In this document: in pieces, positions 317 through 8,494 of the stretch | Layout of the letters: each line of letters opens with the position of its first letter | Position numbering within the stretch: position 1 is the first letter of the stretch | Source: Octopus sinensis | Taxonomy: Eukaryota | Assembly: GCF_006345805.1 (NCBI RefSeq) | Contig: NW_021828558.1 | Coordinates: 1 to 8,494, forward strand | DNA length: 8,494 nt | Direction: 5' to 3' | The notes under the pieces: model-generated | What the model was told of the DNA's origin: nothing | The model's database searches: none | Seen by the model: the letters and a program-made list of their open reading frames with translations, nothing else | Translations under genes and position numbers: made by a program

Positions 317-548
317 AAGGCGGCGAGCTGGCAGAAACGTTAGCATGCCGGCGAAATACTCAGCGGTATTTCGTCTGTCTTTACGTTGTGAGTTCAAATT
401 CCGCCGAGGTCGACTTTGCCTTTCATCCTTTCGGGGTCGATAAATTAAGTACCAGTTACGCACTGGGGTCGATGTAATCGACTTAATCCGTTTGTCTGTC
501 CTTGTTTGTACCCTCTATGTTTAGCTCCTTGTGGGTAATAAAGAAACA
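317..548 (+). mobile_element. tRNA-derived SINE, copy 1 (full head)
   Basis: GGCGGCGAGCTGGCAGAAACG head with an A-box-like motif (329-339), B-box-like GTTCAAATTCC (392-402), and an A-rich tail aataaagaaaca. Near-identical to copy 2. Resembles an abundant octopus SINE (from memory). Confidence 0.8.
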
Positions 549-767
549 AGAAACGTTAGCACGCCGGGCGAAATGCTCAGCGGTATTTCGTCTGCCGTTA
601 CGTTCTGAGTTCAAATTCCACCGAGGTCGACTTTGTCTTTCATCCTTTCGGGGTCGATAAATAAAGTACCAGTTACACACTGGGGTCATTGTAATCGACT
701 TAATCCGTTTGTCTGTCCTTGTTTGTCCCCTCTATCTTTGGCCCCTTGTGGGCAATAAAGAAATAAG
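549..767 (+). mobile_element. tRNA-derived SINE, copy 2 (5'-truncated by ~16 nt, in tandem with copy 1)
   Basis: Direct repeat of 333-548 with a period of ~216-217 bp. It begins at agaaacgttagc, fused to the A-rich tail of copy 1, and ends aataaagaaataag. Confidence 0.8.
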
Positions 768-786
768 AAACGCACTCTGCCGGTGA
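768..786 (+). repeat. Right target-site duplication of the SINE dimer
   Basis: 17/19 match to 298-316. The LINE reading frame resumes here (GGT GAC AAT = G D N). Confidence 0.85.
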
Positions 787-1752
787 CAATGATGTATCCA
801 GTCATGATCAAATCCACGTCTAACAAATAAAGTAACTCTTGGGTCTCAGGATATGAAGATTACAGCCTAAAAGGTTACAACTTGTTCCAGTCTCATCCAA
901 AGTCCACCTCAAAAGATCGAAATAGACATCAACAACAACCCGATCGAAGAGGTTACCTGATTTCAATACCCTGGTTATATCGTCTCTTCCTATGTGACCA
1001 TGGACAAGGGTATCAACATAAGGATACGTGCAGCTCATGTTGTGTATGGAAAACTTTTTCAAAGAGTCTTTAAGAATCACAGAGTGAAAACTGTTGCCAA
1101 GTTGTCTGTATGCCGATCAGTAGTTATCAAATAATGACTTTATATTTGTTGACTCACACCAAAGAGCTGGAACTGTTCCACCAATAAAAACTTCATTCAC
1201 TTGTAGGGGACACAAATGAAGTACACCATAAATATGTCCTTAGAACAAACAGAAACGAAAAACCTCGATGTGATGATAAGCAGTTGTCAGCTGCTTAGGA
1301 TTGGCCATGTTCAAAGGATGGACAATGAATAAGTACGAAAATCAATTCTTTATTTCGATCTCGTAGCAGGAAAATGTCATCATTGAAGTCCACAACTGAG
1401 GTTCAAAAAATGTTTTGAAACAGAATCTCACACTTCGTGGAATCCAGTAAAAGCCGTCCGGACGGTCACAGAGAACAGAAAGCAACGAAGGAATCTTTGC
1501 TATCTTGGCTACTAACTATTTGAGCAGAACAGAAAAGGCAAATAGTACCAAAAAAAAAAAAAACAGCATATGAGAAACAGAAAGCTGGCCACGACTGGCG
1601 AAAGTGTCCCAGTAAACCCGTACAGGAAATGTCATCAAAAGTTTCAAGCAAATTGGGTTTCGGTAGTCATCTGAGGTCCCATGTTAGAAGGTGGAATAAA
1701 ATTGAAGTGGGTGAGACTAACAAAATTGAGTATGTCTAATACGTCAATGACT

Positions 1753-3026: not shown

Positions 3027-3090
3027 AGTTGGTGGAGGTTCGTTTTCGTAAGTTGGTGGAAGTTCATTTTCATAAGTTGGTGGAGGTTCG
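3027..3090. repeat. 24-bp minisatellite, ~2.7 copies
   Basis: agttggtggaggttcgttttcgta / agttggtggaagttcattttcata / agttggtggaggttcg. Confidence 0.9.
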
Positions 3091-3102
3091 TATATAAATA
3101 TA

Positions 3103-3148
<46 letters not shown>

Positions 3149-3208
3149 ATGCATACATGCACATATGTATACACTCACACACATGTATATATATATATAT
3201 ATATATAT
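3091..3208. repeat. (TA)n-rich compound microsatellite, left flank of the array
   Basis: TA runs at 3106-3150 and 3186-3208 with a CA-rich spacer. Confidence 0.95.
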
Positions 3209-3435
3209 AATCAATCAATATAGGGAGGCAAAAAAATTTTGTAGAATTCTTTTGCCCCAGCGGCCTAGTGGGAAAAAATTAAATAGTCATAAACCATTTT
3301 TAAGTTCAATATCACAATCAAGGAACGGCCATAATAGGCCATTCACCCACTAGAAATAACAGCCAAAAAGCTTCAACCGCAAAATAACATTAATTCCGTA
3401 AACCAGGAGAAAATTAAAAAACACTTTACCCTGAA

Positions 3436-3543
3436 ATTCCTTATACGATGCACCGTTTCGTCTACTTGTTAAATGGTAAACTAACCTGATTAAATTAAAT
3501 CAAGCCAATCTACCATAGGCCCTTAGATTCATCAGTAAGGAAT
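3436..3543 (-). ncRNA. Type I hammerhead ribozyme, copy 1 (intact core)
   Basis: Reverse complement reads ATTCCTTA-CTGATGA-[69-nt stem II domain ATCTA...TAGAC]-GAAACGG-TGCA-TCGTA-TAAGGAAT. Stem I is 8 perfect bp; stem III is A-U, C-G, G-C, G-U; GUA triplet. Predicted cleavage between 3444 and 3443. Confidence 0.85.
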
Positions 3544-3926
3544 AGCCAAATCGGAACAGATATTTTTCACGAGGCATTCCCGTCCATGCCTCGCTAATAT
3601 CTGACCTAAAATTTTCAAATCGTCGCACTCGCGCCAAATTTATCGGCAGCAAATAATATAAGCAGCCGATTCCATTACGGAACCAACCAGAAAATTCATA
3701 ATTAATCAATATAGGGAGGCAAAAAATTTTGTAGAATTCTTTTGCCCCCAGCGGCCTAGTGGGAAAAAATTAAATAGTCATAAACCATTTTTAAGTTCAA
3801 TATCACAATCAAGGAACGGCCATAATAGGCCATTCACCCACTAGAAATAACAGCCAAAAAGCTTCAACCGCAAAATAACATTAATTCCGTAAACCAGGAG
3901 AAAATTAAAAAACACTTTACCCTGAA

Positions 3927-4034
3927 ATTCCTTATACGATGCACCGTTTCGTCTACTTGTTAAATGGTAAACTAACCTGATTAAATTAAATCAAGCCAAT
4001 CTACCATAGGCCCTTAGATTCATCAGTAAGGAAT
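3927..4034 (-). ncRNA. Type I hammerhead ribozyme, copy 2 (intact core)
   Basis: Same 108-nt motif as copy 1, 491 bp away. Predicted cleavage between 3935 and 3934. Confidence 0.85.
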
Positions 4035-4713
4035 AGCCAAATCGGAACAGATATTTTTCACGAGGCATTCCCGTCCATGCCTCGCTAATATCTGACCTAA
4101 AATTTTCAAATCGTCGCACTCGCGCCAAATTTATCGGCAGCAAATAAATATAAGCGCCGATTCCATTACGGAACCAACCAGAAAATTCATAATTAATCAT
4201 ATAGGGAGGCAAAAAATTTTGTAGAATTCTTTTGCCCCCAGCGGCCTAGTGGGAAAAAATTAAATAGTCATAAACCATTTTTAAGTTCAATATCACAATC
4301 AAGGAACGGCCATAATAGGCCATTCCCCACTAGAAATAACAGCCCAAAAGCTTCAACCGCAAAATAACATTAATTCCGTATTTTGCGGTTGAAGCTTTTT
4401 GGCTGTTATTTCTAGTGGGTGAATGGCCTATTATGGCCGTTCCTTGATTGTGATATTGAACTTAAAAATGGTTTATGACTATTTAATTTTTTCCACTAGG
4501 CCGCTGGGGGCAAAAGAATTCTACAAAATTTTTTTGCCTCCCTATATTGATTAATTATGAATTTTCTGGTTGGTTCCGTAATGGAATCGGCGGCTTATAT
4601 TTATTTGCTGCCGATAAATTTGGCGCGAGTGCGACGATTTGAAAATTTTAGGTCAGATATTAGCGAGGCATGGACGGGAATGCCTCGTAAAAAATATCTG
4701 TTCCGATTTGGCT

Positions 4714-4817
4714 ATTCCTTACTGATGAATCTAAGGGCCTATGGTAGATTGGCTTGATTTAATTTAATCAGGTTAGTTTACCATTAAACATAGACGAACG
4801 GTGCATCGTATAAGAAT
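4714..4817 (+). ncRNA. Type I hammerhead ribozyme, copy 3 (GAAA reads GAA; stem I 3' strand lacks one G)
   Basis: ATTCCTTA 4714-4721, CTGATGA 4722-4728, 19-bp hairpin 4741-4784, then ...TAGACGAACGGTGCATCGTA-TAAGAAT. The 1-nt deletions may be decay or consensus error. Confidence 0.7.
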
Positions 4818-5201
4818 TTCAGGGTAAATGTTTTTTTAATTTTCTCCTGGTTTACGGAATTAATGTTATTTTGCGGTTGAAGCTTTTTGGCTGTTATTTC
4901 TAGTGGGTGAATGGCCTATTATGGCCGTTCTTGATTGTGATATTGAACTTAAAAATGGTTTATGACTATTTAATTTTTTCCCACTAGGCCGCTGGGGGCA
5001 AAAGAATTCTACAAAATTTTTTTGCCTCCCTATATTGATTAATTATGAATTTTCTGGTTGGTTCCGTAATGGAATCGGCGGCTTATATTTATTTGCTGCC
5101 GATAAATTTGGCGCGAGTGCGACGATTTGAAAATTTTAGGTCAGATATTAGCGAGGCATGGACGGGAATGCCTCGTGAAAAATATCTGTTCCGATTTGGC
5201 T

Positions 5202-5307
5202 ATTCCTTACTGATGAATCTAAGGGCCTATGGTAGATTGGCTTGATTAAATTTAATCAGGTTAGTTTACCATTAAACAGTAGACGAACGGTGCATCGTAT
5301 AAGGAAT
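5202..5307 (+). ncRNA. Type I hammerhead ribozyme, copy 4 (GAAA reads GAA)
   Basis: ATTCCTTA 5202-5209, CTGATGA 5210-5216, GTA 5297-5299, TAAGGAAT 5300-5307. Confidence 0.72.
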
Positions 5308-5688
5308 TTCAGGGTAATGTTTTTTTAATTTTCTCCTGGTTTACGGAATTAATGTTATTTTGCGGTTGAAGCTTTTTGGCTGTTATTTCTAGTGGGTGAA
5401 TGGCCTATTATGGCCGTTCCTGATTGTGATATTGAACTTAAAAATGGTTTATGACTATTAATTTTTTCCCACTAGGCCGCTGGGGGCAAAAGAATTCTAC
5501 AAAATTTTTTTGCCTCCCTATATTGATTAATTATGAATTTTCTGGTTGGTTCCGTAATGGAATCGGCGGTTTATATATTATTGCTGCCGATAAATTTGGC
5601 GCGAGTGCGACGATTTGAAAATTTTAGGTCAGATATTAGCGAGGCATGGACGGGAATGCCTCGTGAAAAATATCTGTTCCGATTGGCT

Positions 5689-5795
5689 ATTCTTACTGAT
5701 GAATCTAAGGGCCTATGGTAGATTGGCTTGATTTAATTTAATCAGGTTAGTTTACCATTAAACAGTAGACGAAACGGTGGCATCGTATAAGGAAT
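5689..5795 (+). ncRNA. Type I hammerhead ribozyme, copy 5 (core intact; 1-nt indels in stem I and loop III)
   Basis: ATTCTTA 5689-5695, CTGATGA 5696-5702, GAAAC 5771-5775, loop TGGCA, GTA 5785-5787, TAAGGAAT 5788-5795. Confidence 0.72.
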
Positions 5796-5912
5796 TTCAG
5801 GGTAAATGTTTTTTTATTTTCTCCTGGTTTACGAAATTAATGGTTTTTGCGGTTGAAGCTTTTTGGCTGTTATTTCTAGTGGGGAATGGCCTATTATGGC
5901 CGTTCCTTGATT

Positions 5913-5915
<3 letters not shown>

Positions 5916-5957
<42 letters not shown>
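5916..5957. repeat. (TA)n microsatellite, right flank of the array
   Basis: About 21 perfect AT units abutting the end of the array. Confidence 0.95.
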
Positions 5958-5960
<3 letters not shown>

Positions 5961-6956
5961 GTGTGTTTGTGTAGACAAATAATTATATGTGCGTATGTAT
6001 ACGTGTATCTATATCTACGTGTGTATGCGCATGTGATTGTATGTACATACATCTGAATACATTTTGTACGTAGGTATTGTGAATACGTGCATAATATTTG
6101 GATACATCTATATATGTACGTATTAACAGAAGTCCGAAGATGCACCCAAGATTAATTTTTACTCACATGTAATCTTGTGATCTGTATGTTTAATTCCTGC
6201 TCTAGTAGATATTTTTTCGGAAATACCTCTAGTTAATAAGTAAACCTTAAGCGCTTTGGAGGAGCATAATTTTGAGCAGGGTTCCTCGTAGTGAAAAACA
6301 AGGCATTTCTAGAGAGTTAGTATCACTCTGAACTCTCGGGTTTCGTACAATAAATGTTTTAGCACCTCACTATTGATCTCTCAGATTTGGACGATATTTG
6401 AATAGTATGAACATGTTTGGAGAAACATGTATCGGCAGACATAGCTATGTCCAGGTCACAAGTGATCCCAGTACTTTAAATTGGTTCTCTGTATAGGCGG
6501 GGATGAGGTAGAACTTTTCGTTGTGGCGATAATCTTTCTATAAGAGAGGACATGAAATTTTTTTCGGCGTTGAGCAATGTGTTTCGTATTCTCTGTAATA
6601 TATGGTATCTAGGTTTTGCTAAAACACACAAACATGCACATACGTGGGTGCGTAGTGTCGGGACACTTATCAGAAAGAATAAGGTGAGGTTTACATGGGG
6701 AGTGGAGTAACCGACATTATGGACCGTCATTCAAGGTAAAAATGGCACGGGGGAAACTAATAGCAGGTGAGCACTCACAAAATCATATGATAAATATATG
6801 TGTGTGTGTGAGTGTGTGTGTGAGTGTGTGTGTGCGCCTTCACACACTTTAAATTGAAGGATTACGCAGTACATTTGCAAATGCACAAATTTATTATTTC
6901 TTGTTTAAGAATAATATTGATAGTGACTTCGAAGTTTCGGCTAGCTAAGCCATCAT

Positions 6957-6997
6957 GTATGTATGTATGTATGTATGTATGTATGTATGTATCTATC

Positions 6998-7034
<37 letters not shown>

Positions 7035-7045
7035 TATATGTATAT
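6957..7045. repeat. (TATG)n/(TA)n microsatellite
   Basis: Directly visible. Confidence 0.95.
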
Positions 7046-7050
7046 AAGGA

Positions 7051-7374
7051 GCACTCCATCGGTTACGACGACGAGTGTCCCAGTTGATCCGATCAACGGA
7101 ACAGCCTGCTCGTGAAATTAACGTGTAAGTGGCTGAGCACTCCACAAACACGTGTACCCTTAACGTAGTTCTCGGGGATATTCAGCGTGACACAGAGAGT
7201 GACAAAGCTGTCCCTTTGAAATACAAGTACAACTCATTTTTGCCAGCTGAGTGGTACTGGAGCAACGTGAAATAATGTGTCTCGCTCAAGGATGTAACGC
7301 ACCGCCGGGAATTGAACTCACGACCTTACGATCGTGAGCCGAATGCCCCTACCCACTAAGCCACGCGCCTTCAC
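7051..7374 (-). mobile_element. tRNA-derived SINE with a CORE-like central domain
   Basis: Minus strand begins GTGAAGGCGCGTGGCTTAGTGG (A box 7353-7363) with B box GAGTTCAATTCC (7308-7319). It continues CCTTGAGCGAGACACATTATTTCAC...CAGCTGGCAAAAATGAG, resembling the CORE consensus CCTTGGGCAAGTCACTT...CTGTAAAATGGG, and ends in a microsatellite tail. Confidence 0.85.
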
Positions 7375-7558: not shown

Positions 7559-8445
7559 CACGGAAAGTGCGTGGAATATAATGCAGTATATGGGGATCGG
7601 ACAATAAACGTAAGCCAGTGTCAACGGTGATTCCAGAAATTCCGAGCTGGAAACTAGGGCCTAGAAGACGAGCCTCATCCTGGAAGATCTGTAGAGCTCG
7701 ACGAGGACGTCCTGCAAACCCTGGAGGAACAAAATCCCATCATAACTTTTGAAGAACTAGCAGAGAAGCTTGGATTTGGTCATTCAACCAATCATCAACA
7801 CCTTCGTGCCTTTGGAAAAGTCAGTAAATTTTTCCGATGGGCTCCTCACAAACTCTTCTAGTCTAATCGTGTGCAGAGAGTGAATGTGCGCTCTTCTCTG
7901 CTGTCTCGTCTCAAGAATGAACCTTTCCCCAACCGAATAGTGACTGGTGACGAGAAATGGGCTCTCTTTAAAAATATCAAGCGCTGAAGACAGTGGGTAG
8001 GGAAAGGAGAAACACCGGCATCCCAGGCTAAAGGTCTTATCTCTCGTAAGGTGTTATCTGATTGGTGCCAAAAGTTTAAATCACTTTGAGCTTTCAAACC
8101 CAAACCAAGCGATAACCATGGAAATCTACTGCGAGCAGCTTAAGTCAGCACTAGAAGAAAAACGCCCATTTTTGGTTGCAAGACGAAAGGTGTTCTTCCA
8201 TTAGGATAACGCTCGGCCACATATAGCGAGGATGACATTTCAATGGCTGGAGCACTTTGATGGGAAACGATGCCCCACCCATCATATACGCCGAACATTG
8301 CCCCCATCTGATTAGCATTTATTCAAAATCATTTGGACAGAAAAAATATGAATTCTGTAGACGAGATCAGAACAGTACTGGAGGAGTATTTTTCGTCACG
8401 GACAAGTAAATTTTGAAAGAGAGCCCTTGAAAGTCTACCAGATAG
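7559..8445 (+). pseudogene. Decayed mariner (Tc1/mariner, DD34D) transposase; both ends and TIRs missing
   Basis: Translation across stops and frameshifts gives ...QCQR*FQKFRAGN*GLEDEPHPGRS (HTH region), RWAPHKL (WVPHEL motif), IVTGDEKW (D at 7949), FH*DNARPH (D at 8205), and HPSYTPNIAP/SD (YSPDLAPSD motif, D at 8310). The 105 nt between the last two Asp codons equals D34D spacing. Confidence 0.92.
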
Positions 8446-8494
8446 TGCCATGCATTGGAACTGAACCCGGAACCCATGGTTGCTAAGCGGGCTT
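8445..8494 (-). mobile_element. Fragment of the tRNA-like head of another SINE (cut by the window edge)
   Basis: Minus strand ...GGTTCCGGGTTCAGTTCCAATGCATGGCAC has a B-box-like GGTTCAGTTCC. Resembles a common octopus SINE head (from memory); only 50 nt are visible. Confidence 0.5.

What the first reader, a model, noticed from the sequence alone, without database searches (positions are those of the whole stretch)
3206..5919. A ~490-bp tandem unit with one type I hammerhead ribozyme per monomer: a retrozyme-like element
Seen: each complete unit contains ATTCCTTA-CTGATGA-(stem II)-GAAACGG-TGCA-TCGTA-TAAGGAAT. There are five copies: 3436-3543 and 3927-4034 on -, and 4714-4817, 5202-5307 and 5689-5795 on +. 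Predicted cleavage sites are 491, 489 and 488 nt apart. Established: type I hammerheads in tandem, non-coding genomic repeats define metazoan non-LTR retrozymes and the pseudo-LTRs of Penelope-like elements (PLEs); their transcripts self-cleave into monomers that can circularise. Inference: this is a non-autonomous retroelement whose multimeric transcript is processed into ~490-nt linear/circular RNAs and mobilised in trans, probably by a PLE reverse transcriptase. The monomer seems larger than the metazoan retrozymes I recall (roughly 150-400 nt), and I do not know of such a family in cephalopods, but I cannot confirm novelty.
Basis: partly seen in the sequence, partly recalled or inferred. 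Interest (0 to 1): 0.92.

Follow-up and report, generated by a model that had tools for sequence, protein, structure and literature searches.

The report
Hammerhead-bearing tandem repeat, retrozyme-like
A ~490-bp non-coding repeat carrying one hammerhead-ribozyme motif per unit sits as two head-to-head arrays inside a (TA)n microsatellite; it looks like one more member of the known animal "retrozyme" mobile elements, with an unusual and untested ribozyme variant.

Summary
A 488-491-bp unit is repeated 2.4 times (3207-4380, motif on the - strand) and 3.2 times (4381-5919, + strand). Each unit has a type I hammerhead-like motif at the stated coordinates, and predicted cleavage sites lie 491, 489 and 488 nt apart.

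Only the two minus-strand motifs are intact; each plus-strand copy has a 1-nt defect in the core, helix I or loop 3.

No Rfam hammerhead model detects the motif. It has an A·C mismatch at the normally G10.1-C11.1 pair, and a ~58-nt hairpin replaces loop 2.

All invariant core bases are present. Helix III plus its loop is a 12-nt quasi-palindrome, and co-folding gives a double hammerhead. The helix II base and core match the experimentally active mussel retrozyme ribozyme apart from G10.1→A.

The locus layout fits published Penelope-like-element insertions: inverted tandem arrays, 3' ends outward against (TA)n, and ends not at the cleavage site.

The best reading is a non-LTR retrozyme-type insertion, a new member of a known kind. 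The ~490-nt size is not unusual: published units span 51-972 bp, and pDo500 is ~500 bp.

No relatives, transcripts or host identity could be obtained. Cleavage, circularisation and mobilisation remain inferred.

The parts
3091..3206 (.). Left flank: imperfect (TA)n microsatellite directly abutting the array
   Evidence: TRF row 3091-3209, period 2; sequence
3207..4380 (-). Left array, 2.4 units, ribozyme-bearing (sense) strand is minus. Pieces: 3'-partial unit 3207-3443, full unit 3444-3934, 5'-truncated unit 3935-4380. The sense 3' end is at unit position ~238 (..TTGATTGATTAT) against (TA)n.
3436..3543 (-). Hammerhead motif copy 1, all boxes intact; predicted cleavage after A at 3444
3927..4034 (-). 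Hammerhead motif copy 2, intact (reference copy). Helix I 4027-4034 pairs with 3927-3934. CUGAUGA 4020-4026. A10.1 at 4019 and C11.1 at 3951. Proximal helix II 4015-4018 / 3952-3955. Distal 19-bp stem 3989-4007 / 3964-3982, with 5 G·U pairs. GAA 3948-3950. Helix III plus loop ACGGUGCAUCGU 3936-3947. A17 at 3935.
4365..4380 (.). Junction of the two arrays. These 16 nt are present only in the left arm (sense TACGGAATTAATGTTA, unit positions 44-59). The right arm starts at unit position 60. There is a 2-nt TA overlap at the joint. Both arrays are 5'-truncated here, joined head to head.
4381..5919 (+). Right array, 3.2 units, sense strand is plus. Pieces: 5'-truncated unit 4381-4810, full units 4811-5299 and 5300-5787, 3'-partial unit 5788-5919. 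The sense 3' end is at unit position ~135 (..TTGATTGTGATAT) against (TA)n.
4714..4817 (+). Hammerhead motif copy 3, defective as assembled: GAACGG (one A of GAAA missing), 2-nt deletion in helix II, TAAGAAT in helix I
5202..5307 (+). Hammerhead motif copy 4, defective as assembled: GAACGG, plus a 1-nt deletion and one substitution in helix II
5689..5795 (+). Hammerhead motif copy 5: core boxes intact, but helix I 5' strand reads ATTCTTA (C missing) and loop 3 has an extra G (GGTGGCATCG)
5920..5957 (.). Right flank: perfect (AT)n microsatellite directly abutting the array
   Evidence: TRF row 5916-5957

Best explanation
This is one insertion of a non-autonomous, non-coding retroelement of the animal non-LTR retrozyme kind.

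Shown:
- The unit is ~490 bp with one type I hammerhead motif.
- The locus reads (TA)n | 3'-2.4 units-5' | 16-nt offset | 5'-3.2 units-3' | (TA)n.

Inferred life cycle:
- A multimeric sense transcript folds so that neighbouring ribozyme copies pair through their 12-nt quasi-palindromic helix III, forming a double hammerhead.
[quoted passage not shown] Helix I holds these ends together for ligation into a circle by a host RNA ligase.
- The circular or multimeric RNA is then copied by a Penelope-like-element reverse transcriptase/endonuclease. The enzyme nicks a (TA)n microsatellite, and each DNA end primes on an AU-rich stretch of the RNA.
- Rolling reverse transcription gives more-than-unit-length cDNAs, and the two cDNAs are joined 5' to 5'.

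The ribozyme is a non-canonical variant of the mussel-type retrozyme hammerhead. It has A·C instead of G10.1-C11.1 and a long hairpin in place of loop 2, so it probably cleaves slowly, if at all, without help.

This particular locus looks like a decaying copy. At most the two minus-strand ribozymes are still complete.
For: Tandem organisation and spacing.

Ribozyme motif:
- All invariant core positions are present in the intact copies: C3-A9 CUGAUGA, G12-A14, the A15.1-U16.1 pair, H17 = A and the U1.1-A2.1 pair.
- Helix I (8 bp) and helix II form in the unconstrained minimum-energy fold. The full hammerhead fold lies only 3 kcal/mol above it (-31.1 vs -34.1).
- The ribozyme domain folds better than shuffles on the sense strand (z -4.75, 0/200) than on the antisense strand (z -2.36, 7/200). 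Five of the 19 distal helix II pairs are G·U, which pair only on the sense strand.
- Co-folding two domains gives exactly the double hammerhead, with a 12-bp inter-copy helix III and inter-copy helix I. Its energy is -79.5 against 2 x -34.1 kcal/mol. The same inter-copy helices appear in the fold of a 619-nt dimeric transcript.
- This matches the published description of animal type I hammerheads: a short helix III with a palindromic loop, active as dimers (PMC4209133, PMC7229834).
- The mussel Mg353 retrozyme ribozyme cleaves in vitro (PMC7229834 and its supplement). It shares ACTGATGA[G/A]TCT and the 12-nt GTAGACGAAACG with this motif.

Unit properties:
- GC is 37%.
- ORFs are at most 73 aa and have no homologues among 5.8 billion proteins.

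Architecture:
- Both arrays are 5'-truncated at the centre.
- Their 3' ends face outward and stop at different unit positions (238 and 135). Neither is at the cleavage site, and each lies at an ..AT(T)AT stretch merging into (TA)n.
- PLE insertions are described as partial tandems with an adjacent inverted 5'-truncated copy and a microsatellite bias, (TA)n for Naiads (PMC8557442).
- Retrozymes are proposed to be PLE-mobilised derivatives of PLE terminal repeats (PMC7229834; bioRxiv 10.64898/2026.07.22.740005).
Against: - No Rfam hammerhead model matches, even at E<=10 on 132 nt.
- A descriptor requiring a 10.1-11.1 pair finds nothing.
- G10.1-C11.1 is the most conserved helix pair of the ribozyme. 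Mismatches other than U·U are reported to work worse (PMC3088659).
- Loop-loop tertiary contacts cannot be recognised.
- Within the locus the ribozyme region is no better conserved than the rest: 2.2% against 1.8% differences.
- Three of the five copies are damaged.
- Whole-monomer structure scores are similar on both strands (z -6.3 and -5.5).
- No other copy, transcript or PLE could be found. Protein-word searches and DNA-pattern scans of three collections gave only two chance bacterial hits.
- (TA)n makes up 7-13% of the surrounding sequence, so landing in one is only mildly improbable.
- About half the differences between copies are 1-nt indels. This suggests assembly noise, so the inverted junction could be an assembly artefact.
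Confidence: 0.62

Rival explanations
1. This is an ordinary minisatellite or tandem repeat whose unit happens to contain a degenerate or fossil hammerhead-like motif with no catalytic activity. The arrays grew by unequal exchange or replication slippage. The inversion arose by a DNA-level fold-back event.
For: - Rfam is silent.
- There is an A·C at 10.1/11.1.
- The ribozyme region shows no extra conservation.
- The relaxed descriptor occurs by chance in about 0.5% of shuffled 8.5-kb windows, so a large genome would hold many chance motifs.
- The two arms are nearly in register, with only a 16-nt offset, as a fold-back would give.
Against: - The joint occurrence of several features is hard to get by chance: a complete core, an 8-bp helix I exactly flanking it, a palindromic helix III and loop, and a one-per-unit position in a tandem repeat.
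- The motif also shares a near-identical helix II base and core with an experimentally active mussel retrozyme ribozyme.
- The arms have unequal lengths and end at different unit positions against the microsatellite. A simple fold-back duplication does not predict this.
Confidence: 0.2
2. The repeat is not an independent element. It is the terminal repeat (pseudo-LTR) region of an autonomous Penelope-like element, present here as a 5'-truncated multi-copy fragment.
For: PLE terminal repeats carry hammerheads. PLE insertions are tandem or inverted and favour microsatellites. Retrozyme consensus sequences match PLE termini in Xenopus.
Against: - The period is 490 bp with no RT or endonuclease coding sequence between the ribozymes. 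PLE units are 3-4 kb.
- The whole unit gives no protein homologue in any of six frames.
- Metazoan PLE hammerheads are minimal variants that mostly lack helix III. They conserve G10.1-C11.1, usually with an extra base after A9. This motif has a 4-bp helix III and no G10.1-C11.1.
Confidence: 0.08
3. The tandem repeat is real, but the head-to-head arrangement is an artefact of long-read assembly (a chimeric or palindromic read). The true locus would then be a single direct array.
For: 24 of 51 differences between copies are single-base indels, which is typical of noisy long-read consensus. Palindromic joins are a known artefact class (own knowledge).
Against: The joint has a 16-nt asymmetric offset and unequal arms. 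Both outer ends run into the same kind of microsatellite. The layout is the one described for real PLE-type insertions.
Confidence: 0.12

Closest known systems
Metazoan non-LTR retrozymes (Cervera & de la Peña 2020, PMC7229834), especially the Mytilus galloprovincialis Mg353 element
   Same: - Short head-to-tail repeats of a few hundred bp, low GC and non-coding.
- One type I hammerhead per unit, with a weak or palindromic helix III.
- The mussel ribozyme shares ACUGAUGA-N-UCU...GUAGAC-GAAACG...CGU-H with this one.
- Like the mussel ribozymes, this one lacks the archetypal loop 1/loop 2 contact nucleotides.
   Different: - G10.1 is A, giving an A·C mismatch.
- Loop 2 is replaced by an internal loop plus a 19-bp hairpin, so the motif is 104-108 nt rather than about 45 nt.
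- Helix III is longer (4 bp plus UGCA).
- The cleavage triplet is GUA rather than GUC.
- The unit is 490 bp against 350-390 bp.
- There is no similarity outside the ribozyme.
- There are no expression or cleavage data.
Hammerhead-bearing satellite DNAs: Dolichopoda pDo500 (~500 bp) and newt/axolotl satellite 2 (330-350 bp)
   Same: - Monomer size matches pDo500.
- The ribozyme is proposed to act both as a single and as a double hammerhead on multimeric transcripts.
- There is a G·U pair in helix III.
- The axolotl Ax353 ribozyme also uses GUA and has a mismatch (U·U) at 10.1/11.1.
   Different: - Those form long satellite blocks of up to thousands of copies. Here there are two short arrays of 2-3 units in a microsatellite.
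- The mismatch here is A·C.
- Helix II is far longer.
Penelope-like elements and their minimal hammerheads (Cervera & de la Peña 2014, PMC4209133; Craig et al. 2021, PMC8557442)
   Same: - Tandem plus inverted 5'-truncated copies.
- Insertion into microsatellites, including (TA)n.
- Larger-than-usual helix II.
- Palindromic helix III region and dimeric action.
   Different: - There is no RT/GIY-YIG ORF.
- The unit is 490 bp.
- Helix III is not minimal.
- G10.1-C11.1 is not conserved.

Membership tests
Metazoan non-LTR retrozyme | [quoted passage not shown] | tested here: met
   Period 488-491 bp, 2.4 + 3.2 copies; size ranges
Metazoan non-LTR retrozyme | One type I hammerhead per unit with the conserved boxes CUGANGA / GAAA / UH and open helix I | tested here: met
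   Boxes are complete in 3 of 5 copies, and every element is intact in 2. Helices II and III are capped and helix I is open.
Metazoan non-LTR retrozyme | [quoted passage not shown] 2026) | tested here: inconclusive
   This is met by the minus-strand pair 3436-3543 / 3927-4034 under my relaxed descriptor only. It is not met if 10.1-11.1 must pair. Their rnabob descriptor was not available.
Metazoan non-LTR retrozyme | Low GC (<45-50%), no coding capacity, no LTR/PBS/PPT | tested here: met
   GC is 37%. ORFs are at most 73 aa with no homologues. No terminal repeats other than the unit itself.
Metazoan non-LTR retrozyme | Weak helix III with a palindromic loop, allowing a dimeric (double) hammerhead | tested here: met
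   ACGGUGCAUCGU is a quasi-palindrome. The duplex energy is -17.5 kcal/mol, and the double hammerhead is the co-fold minimum.
Metazoan non-LTR retrozyme | Self-cleavage and accumulation of linear and circular monomer RNA | not testable with these tools
   No transcript data or bench assay was available.
Metazoan non-LTR retrozyme | Multiple dispersed genomic copies; co-occurrence with autonomous PLEs | not testable with these tools
Searches of the available collections found no relative. There is no PLE ORF in the window.
Canonical hammerhead ribozyme (Rfam Hammerhead_1 and related models) | Score at or above threshold against curated covariance models | tested here: not met
   No hammerhead family appears at gathering score or at E<=10. 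A model built from four published retrozyme ribozymes could not span the 104-nt motif either.
Canonical hammerhead ribozyme (Rfam Hammerhead_1 and related models) | G10.1-C11.1 pair closing helix II | tested here: not met
   It is A·C in all five copies.
Canonical hammerhead ribozyme (Rfam Hammerhead_1 and related models) | Invariant core C3 U4 G5 A6 G8 A9 G12 A13 A14, the A15.1-U16.1 pair, H17 | tested here: met
   Read directly in copies 3436-3543 and 3927-4034
Canonical hammerhead ribozyme (Rfam Hammerhead_1 and related models) | Loop 1 / loop 2 tertiary contacts | tested here: inconclusive
   There is no terminal loop 2. An internal loop lies 5 positions from the core, and a small CU/U internal loop follows the 8-bp helix I. 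Whether they can make contact cannot be judged from sequence.
PLE minimal hammerhead / PLE pseudo-LTR | Helix III absent or 1 bp, G10.1-C11.1 conserved, motif in repeats flanking an RT-endonuclease ORF | tested here: not met
   Helix III is 4 bp. 10.1/11.1 is A·C. No ORF lies between the ribozymes.

The most novel reading that the evidence does not exclude
This could be an editing-gated hammerhead. The only departure from a functional core is an A opposite C at position 10.1/11.1, at the foot of a long (4 + 19 bp) helix II. An A·C mismatch in double-stranded RNA is the classical preferred substrate of ADAR adenosine deaminases (own knowledge). A-to-I editing would create an I-C pair equivalent to the conserved G10.1-C11.1. 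Self-cleavage, and therefore circle formation and mobility, would then depend on editing.

The authors of the mussel retrozyme study raised RNA editing as one possible explanation of sequence heterogeneity.
Probability: 0.04. Interest if true: 0.85.

Novelty: new member of a known kind. Interest (0 to 1): 0.4.

Why it matters
If real, it adds a retrozyme family whose ribozyme escapes the standard covariance models and descriptors, because helix II carries a long insert and 10.1/11.1 is mismatched. Current surveys could therefore be undercounting such elements.

The single-locus anatomy is also informative. The arrays are head to head. Their outward 3' ends stop at AU-rich internal positions rather than at the cleavage site, inside a (TA)n tract. 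That is what target-primed rolling reverse transcription of a circular RNA by a Penelope-like enzyme would leave behind. The retrozyme-PLE link has so far been argued mainly from co-occurrence and sequence similarity.

None of this changes the known picture. It extends it by one family and one suggestive locus.

Tried and rejected
- **Rfam scans.** I ran Rfam at gathering score on the whole window, at E<=10 on the array and at E<=10 on 132 nt around one motif. No hammerhead was found. The only matches were sub-threshold microRNA models, caused trivially by the long inverted junction and by (TA)n.
- **Own covariance model.** I built model R1 from four published retrozyme ribozymes (coral, mussel and two axolotl). 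Its top hits are at the motif sites, but through a spurious short alignment (UCCUUA-CUGAUGA-...-UAAGGG). The model cannot span the ~58-nt insert, so it is uninformative for membership.
- **Relatives by protein search.** I tried to reach other copies through ORFs that gene callers might have predicted on the repeat. The queries were a 73-aa ORF and a 987-aa six-frame pseudo-protein of the unit. Neither gave a hit.
- **Relatives by DNA pattern.** I scanned the metagenome, GTDB genome and viral collections with CTGATGA-N50-80-GAAACGGTGCATCGTA. This gave two chance hits in GC-rich bacterial coding sequence and nothing else.
- **Host identification.** I searched the decayed mariner transposase. The best hits are only 30-40% identical, including one Octopus bimaculoides SETMAR-like protein at 38%, which is not diagnostic.
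- **A retracted strand-asymmetry claim.** I first thought the whole monomer was far more structured on the sense strand, but I had compared the antisense energy with sense-strand shuffles. With proper strand-specific shuffles both strands score alike (z -6.3 and -5.5). Only the ribozyme domain shows a modest strand difference.
- **Covariation.** Analysis across the five copies is pointless, because they are 97-98% identical and differ mostly by indels.
- **Other copies in the window.** No further fragment of the unit is present.
Full report
**What is in the sequence**

Tandem Repeats Finder reports two adjoining arrays of one unit. One has period 491 with 2.4 copies at 3207-4380. The other has period 488 with 3.2 copies at 4379-5919. 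The repeat finder shows they are reverse complements of each other.

The base before the predicted cleavage site (A17 of GUA) lies at 3935 and 3444 on the minus strand and at 4810, 5299 and 5787 on the plus strand. This gives spacings of 491, 489 and 488 nt.

An alignment of all pieces cut at these sites shows 97-98% identity. There are 51 differences, of which 24 are single-base indels. That pattern suggests noisy long-read consensus as much as real mutation.

Only the two minus-strand motifs (3436-3543 and 3927-4034) are complete.
- Copies 4714-4817 and 5202-5307 lack one A of the invariant GAAA.
- Copy 5689-5795 lacks a C in helix I and has an extra G in loop 3.

**Is it a hammerhead?**

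In the intact copies every invariant core position is present: CUGAUGA, GAA, the A15.1-U16.1 pair, A17 and a U1.1-A2.1 pair.
- Helix I is 8 Watson-Crick pairs.
- Helix III is ACGG/UCGU capped by UGCA.
- Helix II is UCUA/UAGA, then a 7x8-nt internal loop, then a 19-bp stem with five G·U pairs.

The unconstrained fold forms helices I and II. It replaces helix III with a UGAUG/CAUCG pairing, and the hammerhead fold is 3 kcal/mol less stable.

Helix III plus its loop, ACGGUGCAUCGU, is a quasi-palindrome.
- Co-folding two domains gives the classical double hammerhead, with a 12-bp inter-copy helix III. Its energy is -79.5 against 2 x -34.1 kcal/mol.
- The same inter-copy helices appear in the fold of a 619-nt dimeric transcript.
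- Animal type I hammerheads are described in just this way: a short helix III, a palindromic loop, and activity as dimers in tandem transcripts (PMC4209133; PMC7229834).

The ribozyme domain is more structured than shuffles on the sense strand (z -4.75) than on the antisense strand (z -2.36).

**Evidence against a canonical hammerhead**

No Rfam hammerhead model matches at any threshold I could set.

The pair closing helix II, normally G10.1-C11.1, is A·C in all five copies. A descriptor that insists on that pair finds nothing. The literature calls this the most conserved pair after A15.1-U16.1. It records natural U·U mismatches there but says other mismatches perform worse (PMC3088659). The axolotl Ax353 ribozyme has U·U.

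The ~58-nt insert in helix II alone explains the silence of covariance models. A model I built from four published retrozyme ribozymes also could not span the motif.

**Chance**

A relaxed descriptor that accepts the motif fires in 14 of 3000 shuffled windows. A strict one gave 3 hits in 3000. For one 490-bp unit that is about 1e-4. This is convincing for a tandem repeat, but it is not enough on its own at genome scale.

**A link to a validated ribozyme**

The supplement of PMC7229834 prints the cloned mussel retrozyme Mg353, whose ribozyme cleaves in vitro.

| Ribozyme | Sequence |
|---|---|
| Mussel Mg353 | GCGUCA-CUGAUGA-GUCU-uuugu-AGAC-GAAA-CG..CG-UC |
| Window motif | UCCUUA-CUGAUGA-AUCUA-[insert]-UAGAC-GAAA-CGG..UCG-UA |

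The 12-nt GTAGACGAAACG is identical, and there is no similarity outside the ribozyme. The window's motif is therefore best described as a mussel-type retrozyme hammerhead with G10.1 changed to A and loop 2 expanded into a long hairpin.

**The unit**

GC is 37%, the same as the window. The longest ORFs are 66-73 aa. Neither they nor a six-frame translation of the unit has any homologue among 5.8 billion proteins.

The whole monomer folds better than shuffles on both strands (z -6.3 and -5.5). This shows many local hairpins but no strand-specific signal. An earlier claim of mine to the contrary rested on the wrong shuffles, and I withdraw it.

**The locus**

In the orientation of the ribozyme, both arrays start 5'-truncated at the centre. 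The left arm starts at unit position 44 and the right arm at position 60, with a 2-nt TA overlap at the joint.

Both arrays run outward. They end at unit positions 238 (..TTGATTGATTAT) and 135 (..TTGATTGTGATAT), and each merges into (TA)n. Neither end coincides with the cleavage site.

Craig et al. describe Penelope-like-element (PLE) insertions as partial tandems, often with an inverted 5'-truncated copy adjacent. They report a bias for microsatellites, (TA)n for Naiads, and that bias hides target-site duplications (PMC8557442).

Retrozymes are proposed to be copied from circular RNA into multimeric cDNA by PLE enzymes (PMC7229834). They have also been proposed as derivatives of PLE terminal repeats (bioRxiv 10.64898/2026.07.22.740005).

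The layout here fits that model:
- outward-facing 3' ends primed at AU microhomology on a nicked (TA)n;
- non-integer copy numbers;
- a 5'-to-5' join.

Caveats:
- (TA)n occupies 7-13% of the neighbouring sequence.
- The small 16-nt offset would also fit a snap-back or fold-back event.
- An assembly artefact cannot be excluded.

**Comparison and novelty**

The element meets the structural definition of a metazoan non-LTR retrozyme, and it works on paper like one. Cleavage, circles, copy number and a partner PLE are untested.

The size is not exceptional. Published ranges are 150-450 bp and 51-972 bp, and pDo500 is roughly 500 bp.

I found no paper describing retrozymes in cephalopods. I also could not confirm that the window is cephalopod.

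I rate it a new member of a known kind with an unusual ribozyme variant, of moderate interest. The boldest reading not excluded is that the A·C mismatch is an ADAR editing site that switches the ribozyme on. I give that about 4%.

Noticed in passing
window 6835-6954, minus strand (motif 6925-6951): This looks like a 5'-truncated remnant of a different hammerhead-bearing element. It reads GGCUUAGCUAGCC-GAAAC-UUCGAA-GUC. Helix II has G10.1-C11.1, and helix III is perfectly palindromic (ACUUCGAAGU). Only ..GAUG of the CUGAUGA box is left, and it abuts the (ATGT)n tract at 6955-7043. The piece is bounded on the other side by (TG)n at 6799-6834. The model hit is weak (8.5 bits, E 0.63), and there is no similarity to the 490-bp unit.
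   Followed up: partly
window 333-772: Two tandem copies (217-bp period, 91% identical) of a SINE-like sequence with a tRNA B-box-like stretch (GAGTTCAAATTCCGCCGAGGTCGAC). ARAGORN calls no tRNA and Rfam gives no hit.
   Followed up: no
window ~7295-7372, minus strand: A tRNA-like sequence with A-box and B-box-like stretches (..GGCTTAGTGGGTAGGGGCATTCGGCTCACGATCGTAAGGTCGTGAGTTCAATTCCCGGCGG..). It lies between two (TA)n-rich tracts. ARAGORN does not call it a tRNA, and it is probably the head of another SINE.
   Followed up: no
window ~7650-8460, plus strand: A decayed mariner-type transposase with several stops and frameshifts. The conceptual protein matches Pfam Transposase_1 above its cut-off, and its best database relatives (30-40% identical) carry HTH_48 and Transposase_1.
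   Followed up: partly
window ~880-1561, plus strand: A stop-ridden reading frame ending in an A-rich run (1548-1561). It looks like the 3' end of a LINE-type retrotransposon, but Pfam gives no significant match, so this rests on inspection only.
   Followed up: partly
window 4011-4032 (-) and equivalent positions in each unit: The helix I 5' strand (UCCUUA) can also pair with UAAGGG in the internal loop of helix II. That pairing would enclose CUGAUGA in a 10-nt hairpin loop. This competing inactive conformer appears in the fold of the dimeric transcript, and the home-made covariance model latched onto it.
   Followed up: partly
window 3207-5919: About half of the differences between repeat copies are single-base indels, many in homopolymer runs. 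This suggests the assembly is lightly polished long-read consensus, so single-base 'defects' in the ribozyme copies should not be over-read.
   Followed up: partly
window 4235-4510: Rfam plant microRNA models (MIR869 at 130 bits against a gathering score of 330, MIR5062, mir-8186 and others) match the centre of the inverted arrays. This is a trivial consequence of a near-perfect long hairpin, not a microRNA gene.
   Followed up: yes
window 3027-3091: A 24-bp motif (AGTTGGTGGAGGTTCGTTTTCATA) is repeated 2.7 times immediately left of the (TA)n tract that borders the array. It is unrelated to the unit.
   Followed up: no
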